A stretch of DNA of 63,874 bases, filler included, from Octopus bimaculoides (lineage: Eukaryota): assembly GCF_001194135.2 (NCBI RefSeq). It is 10 parts of 10 records of this genome, joined end to end, with 100 filler letters (N's around TTAATTAATTAA, not from the genome) between each part and the next. Parts side by side here need not be neighbours in the genome. Positions count along the whole stretch, not along the records: positions 33,900 to 44,754 come from NC_068994.1; 9 more parts are not named here. One strand, 5' to 3'. Under the pieces are notes generated by a model. It worked only from the letters and a program-made list of their open reading frames with translations, did no database searches and was not told the DNA's origin. The position numbers were made by a program, and so were the translations under genes. Of this stretch, positions 33,761 to 42,845 are shown in pieces (the stretch's first letter is position 1; the number at the start of each line of letters is the position of its first letter).

Positions 33761-34219
33761 CCACCCCCCTCCACCGGAAGTTCATTCCTCTGCCATCCCN
33801 NNNNNNNNNNNNNNNNNNNNNNNNNNNNNNNNNNNNNNNNNNNTTAATTAATTAANNNNNNNNNNNNNNNNNNNNNNNNNNNNNNNNNNNNNNNNNNNNA
33901 TATATATTATTGTGTCTGGGGAGAGTCATTCTCTTTTCGTGCCTCACTGGTTCAAGATCCACTCATTTACTTATTTATTTCTTCTAAACTTTTCGTTGTG
34001 TCTTGCAACCTTTTCAATAGTAGTTGACTGTCCATTATCAGAGGTGTGTTCATCAGTGGGCATGTGTATACACATAAGTATGTTTGTATGTAAGCATGTA
34101 TGTGTGTGTATGCATGTATGTGTGTATGTATGTGTGTGTGCTTGAGGTACCTATCTATCTATTTATCTATCTGATTACTTACATATCCATTTACCTACAT
34201 ATATATGTGTGTGTGTGTG

Positions 34220-34258
<39 letters not shown>

Positions 34259-34265
<7 letters not shown>

Positions 34266-34612
34266 GAAATATTGCATTTCTAAATCTCTCAGAGGGACTT
34301 ATACAATAGCAGCACAATAAAGTGATAGTTTGTTGCCAACTAAATGTGGCAATCCCAGGAAATGGAAGAATGCTACTGCTATTTAGCTGCAGGAAACATT
34401 GTTTCCAGTTATGTGACACAAACTTTCTGTATCCTTAAGTTTTCAAACGGGGCAGATAAGAACCTCCACCTAGCAAAGCCAGCATCCAGAGATTAGTTTT
34501 TGCTCTTCATCAGTCTGGTGTAGCTTGGCTTGGCTTGCTTATTTGCCTTTGAAAACTTATAGAATTTCAAGTGAAATAAATTCACTGATCTACAAAATTA
34601 GAAATATTGCAT
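34259..34612 (-). mobile_element. Hammerhead-bearing ~335 nt monomer (family C), slightly more than one unit
   Basis: Starts and ends with AAAATTAGAAATATTGCAT (34259 and 34594). Contains CCAGA-CTGATGA-AGAGC...AAAAC-TAATC-TCTGG at 34486-34518 on the minus strand, with a helix II deletion. Confidence 0.8.
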
Positions 34613-34800
34613 GTCATAGCCCCTTTCCTGGGTCTGCCACATTTAGTTGACAACAAACTACCACTTTATTGTGCTGCTACTGTATAAGTCTCTCTGAGAG
34701 ATTTAGAAATGCAATATTTCTAATTTTGTAGATCAGTGAATTTATTTCACTTGAAATTCTATAAGTTTTCAAAGCGAATAAGCATCAACAGCTAGCAAGC

Positions 34801-36631
34801 CACTTTTTGTTGCTTTTTGAAGAACTGTAGCTGAATTTTTTGTGCAAAGCCATCATTGTTGGGTGGCAGTGAATAATTGAGAGAAATGAAAAGTTACGCA
34901 GAGGCTACTGGAGGTCGAGTTCCCCTAGATCCACCTGTGCTGAAGCCGGAGATGATACAGTGGAATGAGGAGCTGATAAACAAATATTATGGTATGGTAG
35001 AGAAAGAAGGGTCAGATATAAGAATGACCCTGCCAGAGGATGAAAAAGTGAAAATCGAAAAGAAGACGGTCATATTCAGAACATTTTCGAATGAAAATAG
35101 AAGAATTGAACATGCACCACAGGAAGAGATAGAAGAAATTTTGGAAGAACAAATAGGAGACAGCATAGCGTTCTTTATGAGAGGAAAGGGATATGCGTCG
35201 ATAATAGTAACCTTTTTATCAGAAGAGGAGGCGGAAAGAATCTCCAACAGGCTGATACAGGGAGAAAAATGGACTTTGATGCCAAACTGTTTGGGCAAAA
35301 GAATTGTTAGAATTAGGGTGGGAAGAATCCCACTGTCGATAGACCCAGAGTGGATAATAGCCGCAATTTTTCATTTAGAGATGAGGAAGGAAAGCGAAGA
35401 CGTGAGGACTGGCATAAAAAACTGAACCCAACAACTGAAGTAATGGGGCTACGGATTAGAGATAATTTGTGCAGTAAGCCCAAAATATTACGACAAAATA
35501 CCTGAAACTTTAGAGCTACCAAATGAAGAAAGGCTGGAGATAATGTTGGAGGGAAGACCCCCAAAGTGTTACGGATGTGGTAAAAGAGGGCGCTTAAGAA
35601 AGAAATGCCCTAGAGCAGCAGTGGAAATGGTAGAGGAGAGTATTCAGGAGAATATAATGGTAGAAAAACAGCAGAAAACAGAACATGACAGGAACTTTGT
35701 GGAGGTGAAAGCCAGAAAAAGAAAGAGAAGGATGTCACCGGCGACAGTAGAATTGAAGAAGTACAAAGCAATGGAAGAGGAAACCTAACCCACAATGAGA
35801 AACAGTGAAGATTTACCAGTAGGATCACCAATAAAGGACTTACAAGTACAGAGTCATTCAAACCAGCAGACACTCAAACACATAGACATGCAAAAGCACA
35901 CAAGTAATAACGAACAGAAACAAGACAACCCAGAATTACGGAAACCTAAAGTCATAGACACACAGATGAAACACGTAGAATTACAGTCAAAACGAACACA
36001 CAGACACACAAATACAGAGACACAATCATACGAAAGCCAAAAACTGCAGAAATATAGAGACAAGCTACAACATGCAAAACACAAACAAAAAGAAAATTTA
36101 TAGTGAAATATAAGACACTCCAAACTTGAAAGAATTTCAAAATTGAAAGACATTGTGAAAGATTGAATCCACTGAGGCTGGAGGTAGATGTTGAACTGCA
36201 CACCTCGGTGGTGAATTATGTGGACGAAAAGGAGAAGATGAAGTGGTAATTCATGATTTATTTAAGAAACTGTGAAAAACATTTGGTTAAACTTATTGTT
36301 TTTTTTTTGTTTTTTTTTAAGTGGAAAGAAAAGGAAATAAGTAAATTCTGGAACTATTGAATGAACATTTGTTTAAAAAGTTTTAAAATTGTATGGTGAA
36401 AGTGAAAAGGGAAGTCATGGTTTCGCCTCAGAACGAGGCTGGAAATTATTAGGTAAAATGTAAAGTTTTAAAGAAAAAAAGGAATCCACATTGTCATCTC
36501 GGAGTGAGAGAGCCGTCTCATTTTCATTGTAAATTAATTCATTTCACATTCATCATTTCATGTGTTTTTTGTTCCTGCATGTCTGTGTATGTCCCCTCTG
36601 TGTTAGGCATTGTGCCAGTAATAAAGAATAA
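34801..36631 (+). mobile_element. ORF1-only L1/Tx1-like non-autonomous retroelement (HAL1-like) with 11 bp TSD
   Basis: TSD AGCTAGCAAGC (34790-34800) / AGCTAACAAGC (36632-36642); ends AATAAAGAATAA; no RT or endonuclease sequence recognised. Confidence 0.65.
34886..36103 (+). pseudogene. Gag-like ORF1 (RRM-like region + CCHC-type zinc knuckle), three in-frame stops
   Basis: Track ORFs 34877, 35543 and 35795 are all in one frame (406 codons from ATG 34886). Starts MKSYAEA; GKRIVRIRVGRIP; EGRPPKCYGCGKRGRLRKKCP; basic RKRKRR. Stops at 35423, 35441 and 35786. Confidence 0.8.
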
Positions 36632-36641
36632 AGCTAACAAG

Positions 36642-36682
36642 CTAGAATGATGAAGAGCAATGACTCTGAAACTAGTCTCTGG
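36642..36682 (+). ncRNA. Minimal type-I hammerhead (family C), C3-to-A core mutation
   Basis: CTAGA-ATGATGA-AGAG caatga CTCT-GAAAC-TA-GTC-TCTGG. Helices I and II pair; helix III is the palindrome ACTAGT; GUC site. Confidence 0.75.
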
Positions 36683-36848
36683 ATGCTGGCTTTGCTGGGT
36701 GGAGGTGCTTATCTCCCCCATTTGAAAACTTAAGGACACGGAACACTTGTGTCACATAGCCAACTGGAAATGATGTTTCCTGCTGCTAAATAGCAGTGGA
36801 ATTTTTCCCTTTCCTGGGACAGCCACATTTAGTTGGCAACAAACTATC

Positions 36849-36884
<36 letters not shown>

Positions 36885-36899
36885 CATGTCTACATAACA

Positions 36900-37640
36900 G
36901 CCTACTAACAACTCTACCTGTGCATATATAAACTGTGGGTATTGGGGTATGAGTACCTGCTACATATATTCCTTATTTAGTACTGGGTATGTTCATTTAT
37001 AAGGACGTACTCCTTTATTTGTCTGAATGTTGGGTCCTTCAGGTGCTTGAATAAAATCTGAATGTCAAGTTGACCCAGCATGCCTCCTTGTTGGTAGAGT
37101 ATGGAGGACTGTTTTTTTGTCATCCTATTGTCTCAAATAATCATTTAGTCTCTCTGCTATGCTTCTAGAGGTCTCACCTATGTATATCATGTGCTTTACA
37201 AGCACCCTCTATGCAGCTTATGCTGTAGACTACATTTCTAGTTCTACAGTTAATGCCAGAGTTAATCTTACATACCATGCAGTTATCATTGGTGCATGTG
37301 GTATTCACAAAGGGCTACATCCTTCATAGTTGTGATCTGATGGTGCTCCCTGGCTTTTCAACAATCTTAATGTTGAGTTTGGCCTGCTTCAGAGCTTTTC
37401 CTAAATCTTTGGGCTAGTTCTTCATGGGCTATGGCCTCTACAAACATCATTCCTTGATATTTGTCGGTCTTATACCACGTGTTCATCCTGTTTGCTTTGT
37501 TACAAACTGTATCCTATTCCACTCTTTACTTCTATATTTATGGCAGGTACCACTGGTTTCATTACATATAATACTATCTAACTTCTTTCTAGAACCTGAT
37601 CTTTCTGGTCATATCCAGAGAATTGCATGCAGTGCATGAA
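36900..37640 (-). mobile_element. Penelope-like element remnant (GIY-YIG)
   Basis: Minus strand RNVVYSISCIEGAC...(Y)IGETSRSIAERL and a C-terminal INEHxPVLNK-like stretch, with frameshifts. Confidence 0.7.
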
Positions 37641-38279
37641 GTTTCTTTGTTTCATAGGGTTTGTATAAAGGGGACACGTTCATTATCCTAACTAAGTTTG
37701 CTATCAGCATGTTGATTTTCATGTTGTGTGACAAAATTGAGATATATAAAAAAAAAAGACATATAAAAAAGGTATTTCTTTACAAATTTATCAATCAGAA
37801 ATGGTCAGTCACAATAAACTCTAAAGTATGTATGGTTTCTCCCAGAAGAGAAAACATGCATACACTCTCAGACATCTGTTCATATAGACACAAAAATGCA
37901 CACATACATAAAAACATACTTGTATGTATGCATATTGCATGCTTACATGCATACAAAAAACACATCTATTCATACATAAAATCAAACATACACACATAAT
38001 GCATGCATATTGTACATACACATTCATACAGAGACACACATACATAAGACACACATACAAAAGTTACACACATCTATACATCTGTCTACCCATCCATCCA
38101 TTCATACATGCAGCAGATAGACATTGGGATACATACAGGCATACAAAAAACCCATCTATTTATCCATCCATACATCTATCTATATATATTCTTATATTTG
38201 TCTACCCATCCATATATACACACCTACATGCATGCATGAATACATACATATACATACATATACATACACATGCATGCAT

Positions 38280-38318
<39 letters not shown>

Positions 38319-39510
38319 TTGGAGCATTTGGCCACATGGCTAACTGCCTCAATGGTAATCTTGAGAAATTGAGTATCACAAAACTACAAAGTAACTTAAA
38401 ATTCCAGCTACAAGTTATTAAAGATACTGTCAATATATGTAAAACAGTCAAAAAGTTCAACGTGTTATAAGCTCTACACATACAATGGCATTTATGCCGA
38501 CATCGATGTGAATGTACACGTACATACATTCATATATAGAAGACTACCCTGTTGATGTTGTCTAATTTCCATTGAAAGACTCTTGTTTGTACATTAGAAG
38601 CTGGCTCTTACTCCATTAGTGAGAAATTTGAAAAATAAAACCATGAAAACTCTCTCTTTCTCTTTCTCCCTCTCTTTCTTTCCCCCTCTCCTCTCTCCCC
38701 CTCTCCTCTCTCCACCAGATCGGANNNNNNNNNNTCTCTTTCTCCCTCTCTTTCTTTCCCCCTCTCCTCTCTCCCCCTCTCCTCTCTCCCCCTCTCCTCT
38801 CTCCCCTCTCTCTCTCTCTTTCTCTCTCACATGCACACACATACAACCAACATTCATTCATTGATGTATATACAAACATACATAAATACATGCACATCCA
38901 TATGAATAGCCCACATCTATCCATACACACACGTGTATATGCAAACATATATTTATGCATACACACACACACACATAGATACACATACATACCTACATAC
39001 ACATACCTATATATATATACACGTATTATCAATACTTCTTTCAAGTATTCTTAACATTCTCCCCAAAGCTTTCAAGTTCTTCCAATTTCATTGTATTCTA
39101 TAAATCTCTTCATAAATTGTCCAAAATATATACATTTTGATTGACCACTGCTCATTAGGAAAATCTACCTTTAACATTCAGTCAGTTATTGATGCTACTG
39201 TCTCCCATTGTCTTACATAAAATTCTACTTCACAGACAATTAATGTTAAAGGTCATGTGTTAGGTTACTGCTAGCTATTTTAACATCTCCAATGTTGCCA
39301 GTCTGTTAATACATACTGTAAAATTTGTACTAACATACATACTGGTCAGAGATAATAAAATTTAATCAATTAAAATGATGCCTTTAATGAGGAGAAAAAT
39401 ATAATTATCTTTATGATTAGGTGCAAGCATGGCGATGTGGTTAAGAAACTTGCTTAGTAGCCACGTGATTTTAGGTTTAGTCCAACTGTACAATTTGGGT
39501 TGACCAGTGC

Positions 39511-39546
<36 letters not shown>

Positions 39547-40049
39547 CACACACAAACACACGCACACACATGTATATATTATTCTTACACAATAATGACT
39601 ACTGACCGAGACCTTTGGAAATGTGCTGTGCGTGAGAANNNNNNNNNNCAAGCCAAGTGAGATCGTTGCCAGGGCCCCTGGACTGGCTCTTGTGTGGAAA
39701 GCGGACGTTAAACGATGATGATGATGTCCATAATGATTTTCTTAATGTAAACCCTTGCGGTTAATAAAGGAATCCTTATTACTATTAAGACAGAGCTCGA
39801 AGAATTGTTACTGCACTGGGCAAAATGCTTAGCTGCATTTCATCCATCTTCACATTATGAGTTCAAATGCCAACGAGTTCAGCTTTGCCTTTCATCCTTT
39901 CAGAGTTGATGAAATAAGTACCAGTGGAGTACTGGGGTCAATGTAATCAACTTACCCACTCCCTGAAATTACTGGCCTTGTACCAAAATTTGAAACCTTT
40001 TTTTTTCTTTGTTTTCAGTCTGTTTCATTTTTTTAAAACTTTTTTTTAT

Positions 40050-41738
40050 TTCTAAAATGTGGTTATTTTTGTCTTGTTTTCATTGAATGCATCCTTACTG
40101 GCCTGCAAAGACTACTGGGACTGGAGTATCAGACTAGTTAAGTGGCAGTTGACAGGGCCAATCATCAACAACTGGTGGTGGATTGCCTTGGAGAGGATGA
40201 TTAGAGTAGAATTGATAGCATTTAGCAAAGAACTAGCAATAGAAAGAAATATATGAGAGGAAGAACTAGTTAGCAGACTAGAAGAGGCAATTAGTTGAGG
40301 AATTACAACCAATGTGCTAGTGGTGGGAGTGGCCCTTGACCTTTTCTTCGAGATGAAACCATGAGCTAAAGCCCATGCACTCAAACATGAAAGAATTAAA
40401 GTCATTTGATGAGCCCAAATGGTGGAATCACAATGTGACAGCAAAACCATGATCAGGTCTTTGACAGACTGGTACAAGTGCACGCTGCTCAGTTCCAAGC
40501 AGATATGTGCAGCATTCTGGCAGGACTTCACAACTGTATGAAGAGTGTGATGGATCAGTGACAGTACGAGGACTTTAGTTCATATCCGGACGGCCTGCCA
40601 CAGCTCTTGGCAGCAGATACAAGGTTCTGCAAAAAGCCAGTAACAGCTATAGAAATACAGGAAATGATGAGTGGTTGCACAAGTCACAAATCATCGGGTT
40701 TGGCTGGTCCATCCTATGAATTCTGCAAGTTCATGCCAGATTAGTTTGGCAGCCTCTTGGCAGACATCTACTGTAACTGGCAGCAGAATGGAAGGATTCC
40801 TAGTGTTGTGAGCTAGGGAGCAGTAATGCTGCTGTAAAAGGATGCTAACAAAGGGGACATGCTAGGCAATTTTTGGGTCGTAACTCTGCTAAACTCAGTG
40901 TTTAAGATTTTGATCAAGGTATTAGTGAAAAGGTTAGCCGTTGTCATCAGTAATCTGGTGAGGGAGGCATTGCACAATCCTCAACAGGTCTATCCATGCA
41001 ATATGTCATAGAGAGGACTGAGACAAAAGCTGGCTATGGTGGAGCTCTGATCAAATTGGATCAGTCTAAAGCATTCAATAGGGTCATCCACCATTATCAT
41101 TGCTGACTTGTAGAGTTATGTTGAACTATCTGCTTAGCCCATAGTAATGATTGCCCTACAGCCTTTTTTTAATAGTACAGGTTAGGCAGTTTTCCTTTGT
41201 CTCATGGTGATTGCAAAAGAGGTTGTCTGGTGGACAAGGCTGAAAGGTATGAGGACAGAGACTTTCCTCTTTGGTAGGTTCCTTAATGCCTTTTTTGAAG
41301 TTTCACTTGAAAAACAATGTGAGGAGGAAACTGAGGATAGAGAGAGAGAAAGATGTTGTTCTTGGGTGAATTTATTGGAAGGTGGGTGAAAGTTTCAAAA
41401 ATGGCAAGAATGGATAGCACTGCTGTAAGTGTAGAACTGAAAGTTGGAGAACAAGAAGTGGAAAGGTCACATGCCTTTGGTGATCTGGGAAATCTTGGAT
41501 GGTGGGATCCCTCGATTGTTCTTAAAGGTCCTCCTATATCAGGAAGACCACATCACAATTCCTTTTTCTTTTCCTTTTATTTTTGCTTCTTTTACTGATG
41601 TGTACTATGTATACTTTTTCTCTTTGATTTATTGTATACTATGTACACTTTGTATTTGTATTTTTATTTCATTTTATGTATATTTGTTTATAGTAGTAAA
41701 ATGTTTGTGCCACACTTTAGCTCACTCCCTCCCTTCCT

Positions 41739-41740: not shown

Positions 41741-41802
<62 letters not shown>

Positions 41803-41806
<4 letters not shown>

Positions 41807-42149: not shown

Positions 42150-42644
42150 NNNNNNNNNNNNNNNNNNNNNNNNNNNNNNNNNNNNNNNNNNNNNNNNNNN
42201 NNNNNNNNNNNNNNNNNNNNNNNNNNNNNNNNNNNNNNNNNNNNNNNNNNNNNNNNNNNNNNNNNNNNNNNNNNNNNNNNNNNNNNNNNNNNNNNNNNNN
42301 NNNNNNNNNNNNNNNNNNNNNNNNNNNNNNNNNNNNNNNNNNNNNNNNNNNNNNNNNNNNNNNNNNNNNNNNNNNNNNNNNNNNNNNNNNNNNNNNNNNN
42401 NNNNNNNNNNNNNNNNNNNNNNNNNNNNNNNNNNNNNNNNNNNNNNNNNNNNNNNNNNNNNNNNNNNNNNNNNNNNNNNNNNNNNNNNNNNNNNNNNNNN
42501 NNNNNNNNNNNNNNNNNNNNNNNNNNNNNNNNNNNNNNNNNNNNNNNNNNNNNNNNNNNNNNNNNNNNNNNNNNNNNNNNNNNNNNNNNNNNNNNNNNNN
42601 NNNNNNNNNNNNNNNNNNNNNNNNNNNNNNNNNNNNNNNNNNNN

Positions 42645-42845
42645 TGTTAGGGTGTGGCACTTTTTCACGCAGCTATCCTCATCCATTCTCACCACATGTC
42701 CAAACCAGCGCAATCGTCTCTCTTGCACACCACAACTGATGCTTCTAATGTTCAGCTTTTCTCTCAAGATACTTACACTCTGACGGGTATTCACATTGAC
42801 ATTACACATCCAACGGAGCATACTGGCTTCATTCCTTGCAAGCTT
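42645..42845 (-). mobile_element. RTE LINE C-terminal fragment
   Basis: MLRWMCNV...LREKLNIRSISCGVQERRLRWFGHVVRMDEDSCVKKC. Confidence 0.85.

What the first reader, a model, noticed from the sequence alone, without database searches (positions are those of the whole stretch)
34259..36852. Candidate non-LTR retrozyme family: ~340 nt non-coding monomers, each with a minimal hammerhead, in a head-to-head inverted array
Seen: a unit delimited by the repeated AAAATTAGAAATATTGCAT (spacing 335 nt) on the minus strand, back-to-back with a plus-strand array of just over one unit. The two damaged ribozyme copies complement each other to give the consensus CCAGA-CUGAUGA-AGAG caauga CUCU-GAAAC-UA-GUC-UCUGG, a type-I hammerhead with a GUC site. 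No coding capacity. Known: metazoan non-LTR retrozymes are tandem repeats of a few hundred nt with minimal type-I hammerheads, processed to monomers and circRNAs and thought to use Penelope machinery. Inference: this is such a family. I do not know of a description in octopus, but I cannot search for one.
Basis: partly seen in the sequence, partly recalled or inferred. Interest (0 to 1): 0.85.

Follow-up and report, generated by a model that had tools for sequence, protein, structure and literature searches.

The report
Decayed octopus hammerhead retroelement insertion

Summary
The repeats and the two damaged hammerheads are real.

The locus is not an array of non-coding monomers. It is one two-armed, head-to-head insertion into a (TA)n microsatellite, with both 3' ends facing outward and a 58-nt "tail" on one arm only. 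That is the Penelope-like element (PLE) insertion signature.

- **Minus arm:** a single 335-nt short non-coding copy. The 19-nt terminal repeat is the tail, not a second monomer.
- **Plus arm:** the same element with a 1.83-kb ORF2-less LINE nested just 5' of the ribozyme core and flanked by a 12-13-nt direct repeat. Its ORF1 (tandem RRM plus CCHC knuckle) now has in-frame stops and a frameshift.

The same chimera occurs at six O. vulgaris loci. In one of them the inverted arm is also the long form, so the chimera is copied as one template. The short form was seen three times.

No RT/endonuclease partner, tandem array or circular RNA could be tested. Verdict: a retrozyme-like, PLE-dependent non-autonomous family new to cephalopods, with an unexpected LINE ORF1 passenger. 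The window copy is dead.

The parts
34220..34259 (.). (TA)20 microsatellite flanking the 3' end of the minus arm (presumed target)
   Evidence: TRF period 2, 20 copies. Nearly every arm 3' end in all nine insertion events abuts (TA)n.
34259..34316 (-). 58-nt 'tail': a 3' extension of the minus arm beyond the CACTTTAT end used by the plus arm. Its last 19 nt repeat the arm's own 5' start, which gives the 335-nt spacing.
   Evidence: CACTTTAT lies at 34317-34324(-) and 36848-36855(+). The family alignment shows ends with and without this extension. The tail concept comes from PMC8557442 and PMC11167929.
34317..34485 (-). Structured 3' terminal region of the short-form copy
   Evidence: Four conserved hairpins with compensatory changes across 8 copies. 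9 of 33 pairs change on both sides, and pair 204/217 is CG:4 UA:4.
34486..34518 (-). Dead hammerhead of the minus arm. An 8-nt deletion removes the 3' strand of helix II and G12, and G16.2 is changed to A.
34519..34615 (-). 5' part of the short-form copy, including the uninterrupted site (…AAGCCAAGCTACAC|CCAGA) where the long form carries its insert
   Evidence: The same uninterrupted junction is seen in the L001 inverted arm and the L005 solo copy.
34616..34620 (.). Head-to-head junction between the two arms
   Evidence: inverted repeats I1 and I4
34621..34669 (+). Upstream partial copy of the element's last 49 nt (pseudo-LTR-like partial tandem)
   Evidence: Direct repeat D13, 92% identical to 36807-36855. 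Three-way identities are 90-94%.
34670..34803 (+). 5' region of the long-form copy, ending in the left direct repeat R (CTAGCAAGCCAC, 34792-34803)
34804..36633 (+). Nested ORF2-less LINE. It comprises a T-rich 5' end and 5'UTR (34804-34885), an ORF1 remnant (34886-36249; in-frame stops ending at 35425, 35443 and 35788, a premature stop at 36103, a frameshift near 36110), and a 3'UTR ending AATAAAGAATAAAG (36620-36633).
   Evidence: Octopus homologues P0001-P0003. The family has 122 representatives, and none of the 10 longest has RT/EN. The model shows tandem RRMs plus a CCHC knuckle. Distant relatives are ORF1 of complete LINEs with APE+RT. The 3' end aligns with the 3' ends of those LINEs. 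Window 34631-36857 aligns end to end with L001 9136-11289.
34886..36249 (+). Degraded ORF1 (gag-like: two RRM-like domains plus the knuckle PKCYGCGKRGRLRKKC, whose His is replaced by Arg)
36634..36646 (+). Right direct repeat R (CTAACAAGCTAGA). It overlaps the 5' strand of helix I.
   Evidence: R of 13-24 nt flanks the insert in every long copy that retains both junctions.
36642..36682 (+). Hammerhead of the plus arm. All helices are intact, GUC site present, predicted cut after C36677. It is inactivated by C3->A.
36683..36855 (+). Structured 3' terminal region of the long-form copy, ending CACTTTAT without a tail
36853..36884 (.). (TA)16 microsatellite flanking the 3' end of the plus arm

Best explanation
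Window 34259-36855 is a single ancient insertion of an octopod non-autonomous retroelement into a (TA)n microsatellite, made by a Penelope-like (PLE) RT/GIY-YIG enzyme supplied in trans.

Shown:
- The element has a short form of about 335 nt. It consists of a 5' region, a type-I hammerhead and a ~170-nt structured 3' region.
- It also has a long form, in which an ORF2-less LINE (5'UTR, ORF1, 3'UTR) sits immediately 5' of the ribozyme core between 13-24-nt direct repeats.
- In the window, the two arms lie head to head with both 3' ends outward. One arm carries a 58-nt 3' extension.

Inferred:
- Both strands of the cut target primed reverse transcription from the element's internal start sites, one on a short-form RNA and one on a long-form RNA. 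The two cDNAs were then joined head to head. This is the behaviour shown in vitro for the anole PLE.
- The LINE module entered by an ordinary LINE insertion, so the direct repeat is a target-site duplication. It has since travelled with the element.
- The short form is either the ancestral empty element or a deletion between the repeats during reverse transcription.
- In intact copies the ribozyme probably cuts multimeric transcripts as a dimer, through the palindromic ACUAGU helix III.

In this window both ribozymes and the ORF are dead, so the copy is a fossil.
For: 1. Same architecture at independent O. vulgaris loci reached only through ORF1 similarity: L001, L002, L003, L004, L005 and L006. 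Window 34631-36857 aligns over 2295 nt with L001.
2. PLE signature:
   - seven of nine insertion events are two-armed with 3' ends outward;
   - where a tail is present it is on one arm only;
   - upstream partial tandems occur;
   - nearly every arm 3' end abuts (TA)n.
   These are the features listed for PLEs in PMC8557442. PMC11167929 shows a PLE protein cutting and extending both strands, with internal RT start sites that create the tail.
3. The L004 inverted arm is long-form: 5186-5941 vs 7998-7241, 89% identical. The chimera is therefore copied as one template starting from the element's 3' end.
4. Hammerhead under constraint:
   - intact copy in L005;
   - U3/A8 double change in L003;
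   - helix I fully replaced yet still paired in L004 and L006;
   - helix II positions 1 and 3 compensated;
   - 3 descriptor hits against 0.005 expected.
5. The LINE nature of the insert is supported. The L007 LINE has the same T-rich start and a 16-bp TSD.
6. The short form is seen without the insert three times.
7. A decayed PLE fragment with a CX4CX2C linker and GIY-YIG abuts the same (TA)n. A complete PLE with hammerhead pLTRs lies in L003.
Against: - No autonomous PLE sharing the element's 3' region or tail was found. The neighbouring PLE fragment and the L003 PLE show no sequence similarity to it.
- Rfam hammerhead models do not score even the intact copy.
- Helix III cannot form within one molecule, so activity rests on an assumed dimer.
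- The tail is 55-58 nt, against the 30-40 nt described for PLEs.
- In L005 both arms end in (CT)n before (TA)n, in mirror symmetry. This suggests that part of the microsatellite may be added at reverse transcription rather than being the target.
- The loci were sampled through ORF1, so long forms are over-represented, and nothing is known genome-wide.
- R boundaries differ between subfamilies, and L006 carries two ORF1 modules in tandem. This fits repeated site-specific LINE insertion as well as a single capture.
- There is no RNA evidence of any kind.
Confidence: 0.7

Rival explanations
1. One reading: the ~335-nt unit is a bona fide non-LTR retrozyme. That would mean tandem multimers transcribed, cut by the hammerhead, circularised and reverse-transcribed by rolling circle. 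This locus would then be a fragment of such arrays in inverted orientation.
For: - Size, GC of 37%, non-coding short form and type-I hammerhead of canonical metazoan build fit the definition in PMC7229834 and PMC7761336.
- The short-form RNA folds better than shuffles, z = -3.66.
- Slightly more than one unit (1.06) is what a circular or multimeric template would give.
- Monomer-only retrozyme families are reported.
Against: - No locus shows two or more consecutive monomers. The 19-nt overlap is accounted for by the one-sided tail.
- Copy ends lie about 170 and 225 nt downstream of the cleavage site, not at it.
- Most sampled copies carry a protein-coding module.
- Circular RNA could not be tested.
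Confidence: 0.2
2. The unit is simply the pseudo-LTR of an autonomous Penelope-like element. The copies seen here would be internally rearranged PLEs.
For: - PLEs carry hammerheads in their pLTRs and show exactly this insertion architecture.
- PLEs are abundant in Octopus.
- In Xenopus, retrozymes are sister to PLE pLTRs.
Against: - None of seven long copies or three short copies has RT or GIY-YIG between or beside the unit halves.
- None of the 10 longest of 122 ORF1 relatives has RT/EN domains.
- The two PLEs at hand share no sequence with the unit.
Confidence: 0.1
3. The whole element is a LINE-dependent SINE-like or HAL1-like element, moved by the LINE family whose ORF1 it carries. The (TA)n would be its own 3' microsatellite tail, and the hammerhead a passenger.
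For: - ORF1 and the insert's 3' end are LINE-derived.
- Related LINEs end in microsatellites: (TTA)n in L008, and (AT)30 after the LINE fragment in this window.
- The mirror-image (CT)n(TA)n in L005.
- A small hairpin precedes the element's 3' end, as in stringent LINE/SINE pairs.
Against: - The outer ends are not LINE ends. The LINE 3' end lies internally, next to R.
- Both arms start from the same 3' end and overlap in content, which L1-type twin priming does not produce.
- A one-sided tail is described as unique to PLEs.
- (TA)n lies on both sides of the 5'-truncated L005 solo copy.
Confidence: 0.1
4. Sub-rival on the origin of the long form: the ORF1-only LINE is a site-specific element, like Tx1L in Tx1D. 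It would repeatedly target the ~30 nt just 5' of the hammerhead core, rather than being captured once and co-amplified.
For: - R boundaries differ by up to ~12 nt between subfamilies (L002 vs L005).
- L006 has two ORF1 modules of different subfamilies in tandem, each followed by R.
- All seven modules sit at the same site in the same orientation.
Against: - All six observable 5' junctions are full length, whereas LINE insertions are usually 5'-truncated.
- The unit and the module diverge in step between loci: about 71% identity over the whole 2.3 kb.
- The L004 arms show the chimera being copied as one template.
- Template switching at R explains both the deletions and the L006 duplication.
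Confidence: 0.3

Closest known systems
Metazoan non-LTR retrozymes (Cervera & de la Pena 2020, PMC7229834; review PMC7761336; vertebrate survey, bioRxiv 10.64898/2026.07.22.740005)
   Same: - A few-hundred-nt, AT-rich, non-coding unit with a type-I hammerhead.
- 4-bp helix II, 5-6-nt loop 2, very short palindromic helix III implying dimer cleavage.
- Presumed dependence on PLE machinery.
- Previously reported in a mollusc (mussel).
   Different: - No tandem multimers seen.
- Insertion ends carry explicit PLE marks (inverted arms, tail, (TA)n), which the review says retrozymes lack.
- Most sampled copies carry a LINE ORF1 module, whereas retrozymes are defined as non-coding.
- Circular RNA is untested.
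Penelope-like elements and their hammerhead-bearing pseudo-LTRs (PMC4209133, PMC8557442, PMC11167929)
   Same: - Partial tandem upstream copy.
- Adjacent inverted 5'-truncated copy.
- One-sided tail and AT-rich/(TA)n insertion sites.
- Hammerhead a fixed distance upstream of the reverse-transcription start.
   Different: - No RT or GIY-YIG ORF.
- The ribozyme is not the PLE 'minimal' type (helix II 7-8 bp, no helix III).
- The tail is 55-58 nt rather than 30-40 nt.
ORF1-only LINE derivatives such as mammalian HAL1 (from my own knowledge, not checked here)
   Same: A LINE that has lost ORF2 but keeps a conserved ORF1. Copies that are intact or only truncated at the C-terminal end persist in diverged subfamilies (P0001, P0004, P0005).
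   Different: Here the module is not at large in the genome. In all seven cases it is embedded at one site of a ribozyme-bearing carrier and moves with the carrier's ends.
Site-specific Tx1-clade LINEs that insert into another transposon, such as Tx1L in Tx1D of Xenopus (from my own knowledge, not checked here)
   Same: A LINE found at one defined site inside another repeated element, flanked by a target duplication.
   Different: The clade of the octopus LINE was not determined. Co-amplification with the carrier is better supported than repeated targeting.
Schistosoma Sm-alpha and newt satellite 2 hammerhead repeats (cited in PMC7229834; sequence details from my own knowledge)
   Same: SINE-like or satellite repeats of ~330 nt carrying a type-I hammerhead with a CAAAUA-like loop 2 and a minimal helix III.
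   Different: Those occur in long tandem arrays or as dispersed SINE-like copies, without a nested coding module or a documented two-armed insertion.

Membership tests
Hammerhead ribozyme, type I | Conserved core C3-U4-G5-A6-N7-G8-A9 ... G12-A13-A14, then A15.1/U16.1 and a cleavable H17 | tested here: met
   The family meets it: the L005 copy is fully intact, L001 has CUGAAGA (N7=A), and L003 has the known U3/A8 covariant. Both window copies fail, through C3->A and an 8-nt deletion.
Hammerhead ribozyme, type I | Three helices around the core, with helix I open, supported by covariation | tested here: met
   Every helix I position shows at least 2 standard pair types across 7 copies. Helix II positions 1 and 3 are compensated. 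Helix III is 2 bp with a 2-nt loop, forms only in a dimer, and ACUAGU is palindromic.
Hammerhead ribozyme, type I | Recognised by curated covariance models (Rfam Hammerhead families) | tested here: not met
   No hammerhead hit at E<=10 in the window, in L001 9300-9900 or in L005 6150-6300. This is probably because of the 2-nt helix III loop.
Hammerhead ribozyme, type I | Self-cleavage | not testable with these tools
   Needs in vitro transcription of monomer and dimer.
Non-LTR retrozyme | Small (about 150-400 bp) repeats with a type-I hammerhead and GC below 45-50% | tested here: met
   The short form is 335 nt with GC 37.3%.
Non-LTR retrozyme | Head-to-tail tandem multimers (dimers to large arrays) | tested here: not met
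   At most 1.06 units in the window. There were no consecutive monomers in about 130 kb of fetched Octopus and Argonauta loci. A genome-wide census was not possible.
Non-LTR retrozyme | No protein-coding capacity | tested here: inconclusive
   The short form is non-coding. Seven long-form copies carry a LINE ORF1, which is uninterrupted in P0001 (257 aa, C-terminally truncated) and P0004, and in P0005, whose locus was not fetched.
Non-LTR retrozyme | Expressed as monomeric linear and circular RNA | not testable with these tools
   No RNA data available.
Penelope-like element (autonomous) | ORF with telomerase-like RT and GIY-YIG endonuclease | tested here: not met
   Absent from all copies. 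Only an unrelated decayed PLE fragment lies next door.
PLE-type insertion (autonomous or dependent) | Partial tandem (pLTR), adjacent inverted 5'-truncated copy, one-sided tail, AT-rich/(TA)n site | tested here: met
   All four features are present in the window and recur in L001 (twice), L002, L003, L004 and L005. L006 has the partial tandem only.
Non-LTR retrotransposon (LINE), for the 1.83-kb insert | ORF1 of RRM + CCHC type, LINE 3' end, flanking target-site duplication | tested here: met
Non-LTR retrotransposon (LINE), for the 1.83-kb insert | ORF2 with endonuclease and RT | tested here: not met
   ORF1 is followed directly by a ~385-nt 3'UTR in the window. No ORF2 was seen in the other copies either.

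The most novel reading that the evidence does not exclude
Octopods harbour a three-way parasitic arrangement. A hammerhead-bearing, retrozyme-like carrier is integrated by Penelope-like RT/endonuclease. Through many rounds of amplification and subfamily divergence it has kept a captured LINE ORF1 (an RRM-RRM-knuckle RNA chaperone) lodged exactly at the 5' edge of its ribozyme. One mobile RNA would then combine a ribozyme, a LINE protein and PLE integration, with the short non-coding 'retrozyme' form arising again and again by deletion between the flanking repeats. This would give a concrete, sequence-marked link between retrozymes and their mobilising enzyme, and a route by which such elements gain and lose genes.
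Probability: 0.35. Interest if true: 0.7.

Novelty: new variant of a known kind. Interest (0 to 1): 0.5.

Why it matters
The review of the field states that animal retrozyme repeats carry no motif that reveals which autonomous element moves them. A 2026 preprint argues from vertebrate data that they derive from PLE pseudo-LTRs.

This octopod family shows the PLE integration scars directly on a retrozyme-like unit: two outward-facing arms, a one-sided tail and (TA)n sites. It extends the picture to cephalopods.

It also shows that such a unit can carry and keep a LINE ORF1, which is outside the current definition of retrozymes as non-coding. That makes two questions directly testable:
- Is the ribozyme needed for mobilisation or only for RNA processing?
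- Does the ORF1 protein serve the carrier?

For genome annotation, these chimeras are currently called as 'uncharacterized protein' genes in Octopus assemblies.

Tried and rejected
- **Rfam scans** of the window, L001 and L005 at E<=10 gave no hammerhead hit, only microsatellite-driven miRNA noise. I kept the hammerhead call on comparative grounds.
- **Pfam on the three window ORF pieces** gave nothing above threshold. The knuckle has lost its His here, and homologues and structure were needed.
- **Intron idea:** I considered that the 1.83-kb insert might be an intron, because PLEs retain introns and the insert starts with a pyrimidine tract plus AG. There is no conserved GT donor, and it has LINE ends, so I rejected this.
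- **Segmental duplication:** I considered that the window and L001 might be duplicates of one locus, because the left flanks share a repeat. That repeat is itself multi-copy and sits at different distances, so I rejected this.
- **Uneven age of the three unit pieces:** the first impression came from comparing different segments. In the shared 49 nt all pairs are 90-94% identical.
- **Search for the autonomous partner:** the neighbouring PLE fragment as a protein query gave one uninformative hit.
- **Unbiased sampling of unit copies:** a spurious ORF inside the unit as a protein query found nothing.
- **P0005 and P0008** are not on record in the gene-position index.
- **L002, L006 and L008** were not available to scripts and were read through the sequence tools.
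- **L1-type twin priming** as the source of the inverted arm is rejected, because the arms overlap in content and both start at the element's own 3' end.
Full report
**1. What is in the sequence**

The 19-mer AAAATTAGAAATATTGCAT occurs at 34259-34277 and 34594-34612, spacing 335. Its reverse complement is at 34709-34727.

A minus-strand copy runs 34615->34259. It meets a plus-strand copy head to head at 34616-34620. The inverted repeats between the two are 89-99% complementary.

The plus copy is not continuous.
- Pieces 34621-34803 and 36634-36855 match the unit.
- (TA)20 and (TA)16 flank the whole composite.

**2. The ribozymes**

- The plus copy (36642-36682) reads CTAGA-ATGATGA-AGAG-CAATGA-CTCT-GAAAC-TA-GTC-TCTGG. 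All helices pair, but C3 is A.
- The minus copy (34486-34518) keeps CCAGA-CTGATGA-AGAG. It has lost 8 nt (helix II 3' strand and G12) and has G16.2->A.
- No intact CTGATGA...GAAAC exists in the window.
- Rfam reports no hammerhead at E<=10.

On the window alone the ribozyme would remain a reconstruction.

**3. Relatives**

The 1.83-kb insert holds one reading frame with in-frame stops. Its translation finds Octopus proteins (P0001 at E=5e-68).

Looking up where these and further family members are encoded gave six O. vulgaris loci, L001-L006. All six carry the same composite. Window 34631-36857 aligns with L001 9136-11289 over 2295 nt at 71%. The insert therefore belongs to the element and is not a chance nested insertion.

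The homologous ribozymes:

| Copy | State |
|---|---|
| L005 6203-6242 | Fully intact: CCAGA-CTGATGA-TGAG-CAAGA-CTCA-GAAAC-TA-GTC-TCTGG |
| L001 | One mismatch at the 10.1/11.1 pair |
| L003 | TTGATAA, the U3/A8 double change described for Cercyon PLEs |
| L004 | Helix I CCTGAA/TTCAGG and helix II TGGG/CCCA |
| L006 | Helix I CACATG/CGTGTG |

Every helix I position shows two or more standard pair types. A descriptor finds 3 hits in 101 kb against 0.005 in shuffles. I take the hammerhead as real and selected in the family.

Two cautions apply.
- Rfam models do not score even the intact copy.
- Helix III (AC-UA-GU) cannot close within one molecule. Activity would need the dimer that the palindrome ACUAGU allows, as proposed for metazoan type-I ribozymes.

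By the criteria of PMC4209133 this is the canonical metazoan build: 4-bp helix II, 5-6-nt loop 2 and a tiny palindromic helix III. It is not the PLE 'minimal' type.

**4. Insertion architecture**

Across the window and the six O. vulgaris loci I count nine insertion events. These include a small extra one at L001 6850-7144 and a solo short copy at L005 7160-7410.
- Seven are two-armed, with the arms head to head and both 3' ends outward.
- Nearly every arm 3' end abuts (TA)n.
- Copies end either at ...CACTTTAT or 55-58 nt further on.
- Where the extension is present it is on one arm only.
- Several plus arms are preceded by a partial copy of the 3' end.

This is the list of PLE hallmarks given by Craig et al.. 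The anole PLE protein cuts and extends both DNA strands and starts reverse transcription at two internal sites whose spacing is the tail.

The 19-nt terminal repeat and the 335-nt spacing in the window follow from this. The minus arm lacks the first ~36 nt of the element and carries the 58-nt tail. It is therefore one copy, not an array.

The ~170 nt between the ribozyme and the 3' end contain four hairpins with compensatory changes, one of them just before the end. They are a plausible recognition module for the enzyme, but this is inference.

**5. The insert is an ORF2-less LINE**

- The ORF1 model is two RRM-like domains followed by a CCHC knuckle.
- None of the ten longest of its 122 relatives has RT or endonuclease domains.
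- The distant relatives P0014 (Argonauta, L007) and P0011 (O. sinensis, L008) are ORF1 of complete LINEs with APE and RT.
- The last ~90 nt of the insert align with the 3' ends of those LINEs.
- The insert starts with a T-rich tract, as the L007 LINE does. That LINE has a 16-bp target duplication.
- The insert is flanked in every long copy that retains both junctions by a 13-24-nt direct repeat R. R ends at or near the 5' strand of helix I.

I read R as a LINE target-site duplication.

The short form, with an uninterrupted site, is seen three times: the window minus arm, the L001 inverted arm and the L005 solo copy.

In L004 the inverted arm is itself long-form and 89% identical to the plus arm over 780 nt. 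The chimera is therefore reverse-transcribed as one template from the carrier's 3' end.

Uninterrupted ORF1s in subfamilies only 38-49% identical at the protein level (P0004 and P0005 near full length; P0001, 257 aa, C-terminally truncated) argue that the ORF has been under selection during amplification.

**6. What remains open**

- **Single capture or repeated targeting.** All observable 5' junctions are full length and the unit and module diverge in step. This favours a single capture followed by co-amplification. Variable R boundaries and the two tandem modules of L006 would equally fit a site-specific ORF1-only LINE, or template switching at R.
- **No partner identified.** The PLE fragment next door (36890-37700, minus strand; CX4CX2C linker plus GIY-YIG, Pfam E=0.0011) and the complete PLE in L003 share no sequence with the element.
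- **Untested retrozyme features.** Tandem arrays and circular RNA could not be tested, because no eukaryotic genome or RNA search was available.
- **Possible added microsatellite.** The mirror-image (CT)n in L005 hints that some microsatellite sequence may be added at reverse transcription.

**7. Comparison and verdict**

The short form works like, and may qualify as, a monomeric non-LTR retrozyme. The tandem criterion was not met in the sample, so I do not file it as a member.

It is not an autonomous PLE and not an ordinary pLTR. It is a PLE-type non-autonomous element.

The long form, a ribozyme carrier with a resident LINE ORF1, has no counterpart in the papers I could search. The nearest analogues are HAL1 and Tx1L/Tx1D, recalled from my own knowledge.

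The window copy is a fossil: both ribozymes are dead, ORF1 is broken, and the arms are 6-10% apart.

The finding is real and moderately interesting.

Noticed in passing
window 36890-37700 (minus strand): Decayed, 5'-truncated Penelope-like element fragment with a CX4CX2C linker and a GIY-YIG motif (VVYSISC...YIGETSRSIAERLNDY), carrying stops and frameshifts. Its 3' end abuts the same (TA)n as the hammerhead element, so this microsatellite was hit at least twice by PLE-type insertions.
   Followed up: partly
window 40068-41317 (plus strand), followed by (AT)30 at 41744-41803: Decayed, internally deleted LINE ORF2 fragment. It is 35-55% identical to the ORF2 of the Argonauta LINE in L007, whose ORF1 is the distant relative of the element's ORF1.
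   Followed up: partly
window 42650-42821 (minus strand), next to the N run 42151-42645: ORF ending ...LRWFGHVVRMDEDSCVKKCHTL runs into an assembly gap. It looks like the C-terminal end of another LINE ORF2 (RTE-like by memory). Short N runs at 38725-38734 and 39640-39649 are further assembly gaps.
   Followed up: no
window 33900-34170; L001 7218-7386, 7401-7681, 8406-8448: An unrelated repeat (TTGTGTCTGGGGAGAGTCATTCTC...) lies next to the microsatellites on the left flank. It recurs in both orientations in L001. It is probably a MITE- or SINE-like family that seeds or targets microsatellites.
   Followed up: no
window 39793-39994; L001 1-961, 8612-8709, 16985-17150: A ~200-nt dispersed repeat with many copies at 72-81% identity, probably an octopus SINE. 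ARAGORN finds no tRNA in it.
   Followed up: no
L003 217-3632: [quoted passage not shown]
   Followed up: partly
L006 3017-6830: Two ORF1 modules of different subfamilies lie in tandem inside one carrier, each followed by a copy of the direct repeat R (R-module-R-module-R-hammerhead). This was either two hits at one site or template switching at R.
   Followed up: partly
L005 4026-4042 and 6404-6427: Both arms of the two-armed insertion end in (CT)n before the (TA)n, in mirror symmetry. This is not what a split pre-existing target or a direct target duplication would give. It may reflect slippage at the reverse-transcription start.
   Followed up: no
L001 6850-7144: A second, very short two-armed insertion of the same family. 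Each arm has only ~100-170 nt of the 3' region, with a tail on the plus arm only and (TA)n on both sides.
   Followed up: partly
L001 13542 (+), L005 7547 (-); L001 5943 (-) / 6038 (+): Further hammerhead-like motifs of other families: CTGAAGAGCGTAGGCTCGAAACGT, and a palindromic pair CTGATGATTTCATTTGAATGAAACAGTTCTAGTC. Octopus DNA seems rich in PLE-type ribozyme motifs.
   Followed up: no
window 36419-36520 and the homologous 3'UTR positions in L001, L003, L004, L005: Conserved hairpins in the LINE-derived 3'UTR: GGTTTCGCCTC..GAGGC, and TCATCTCG..GAGATGGCCGTCTCATTT. The first is duplicated in L001. The motif GGTTTCGCCT resembles the last codons of the O. sinensis LINE ORF2.
   Followed up: no
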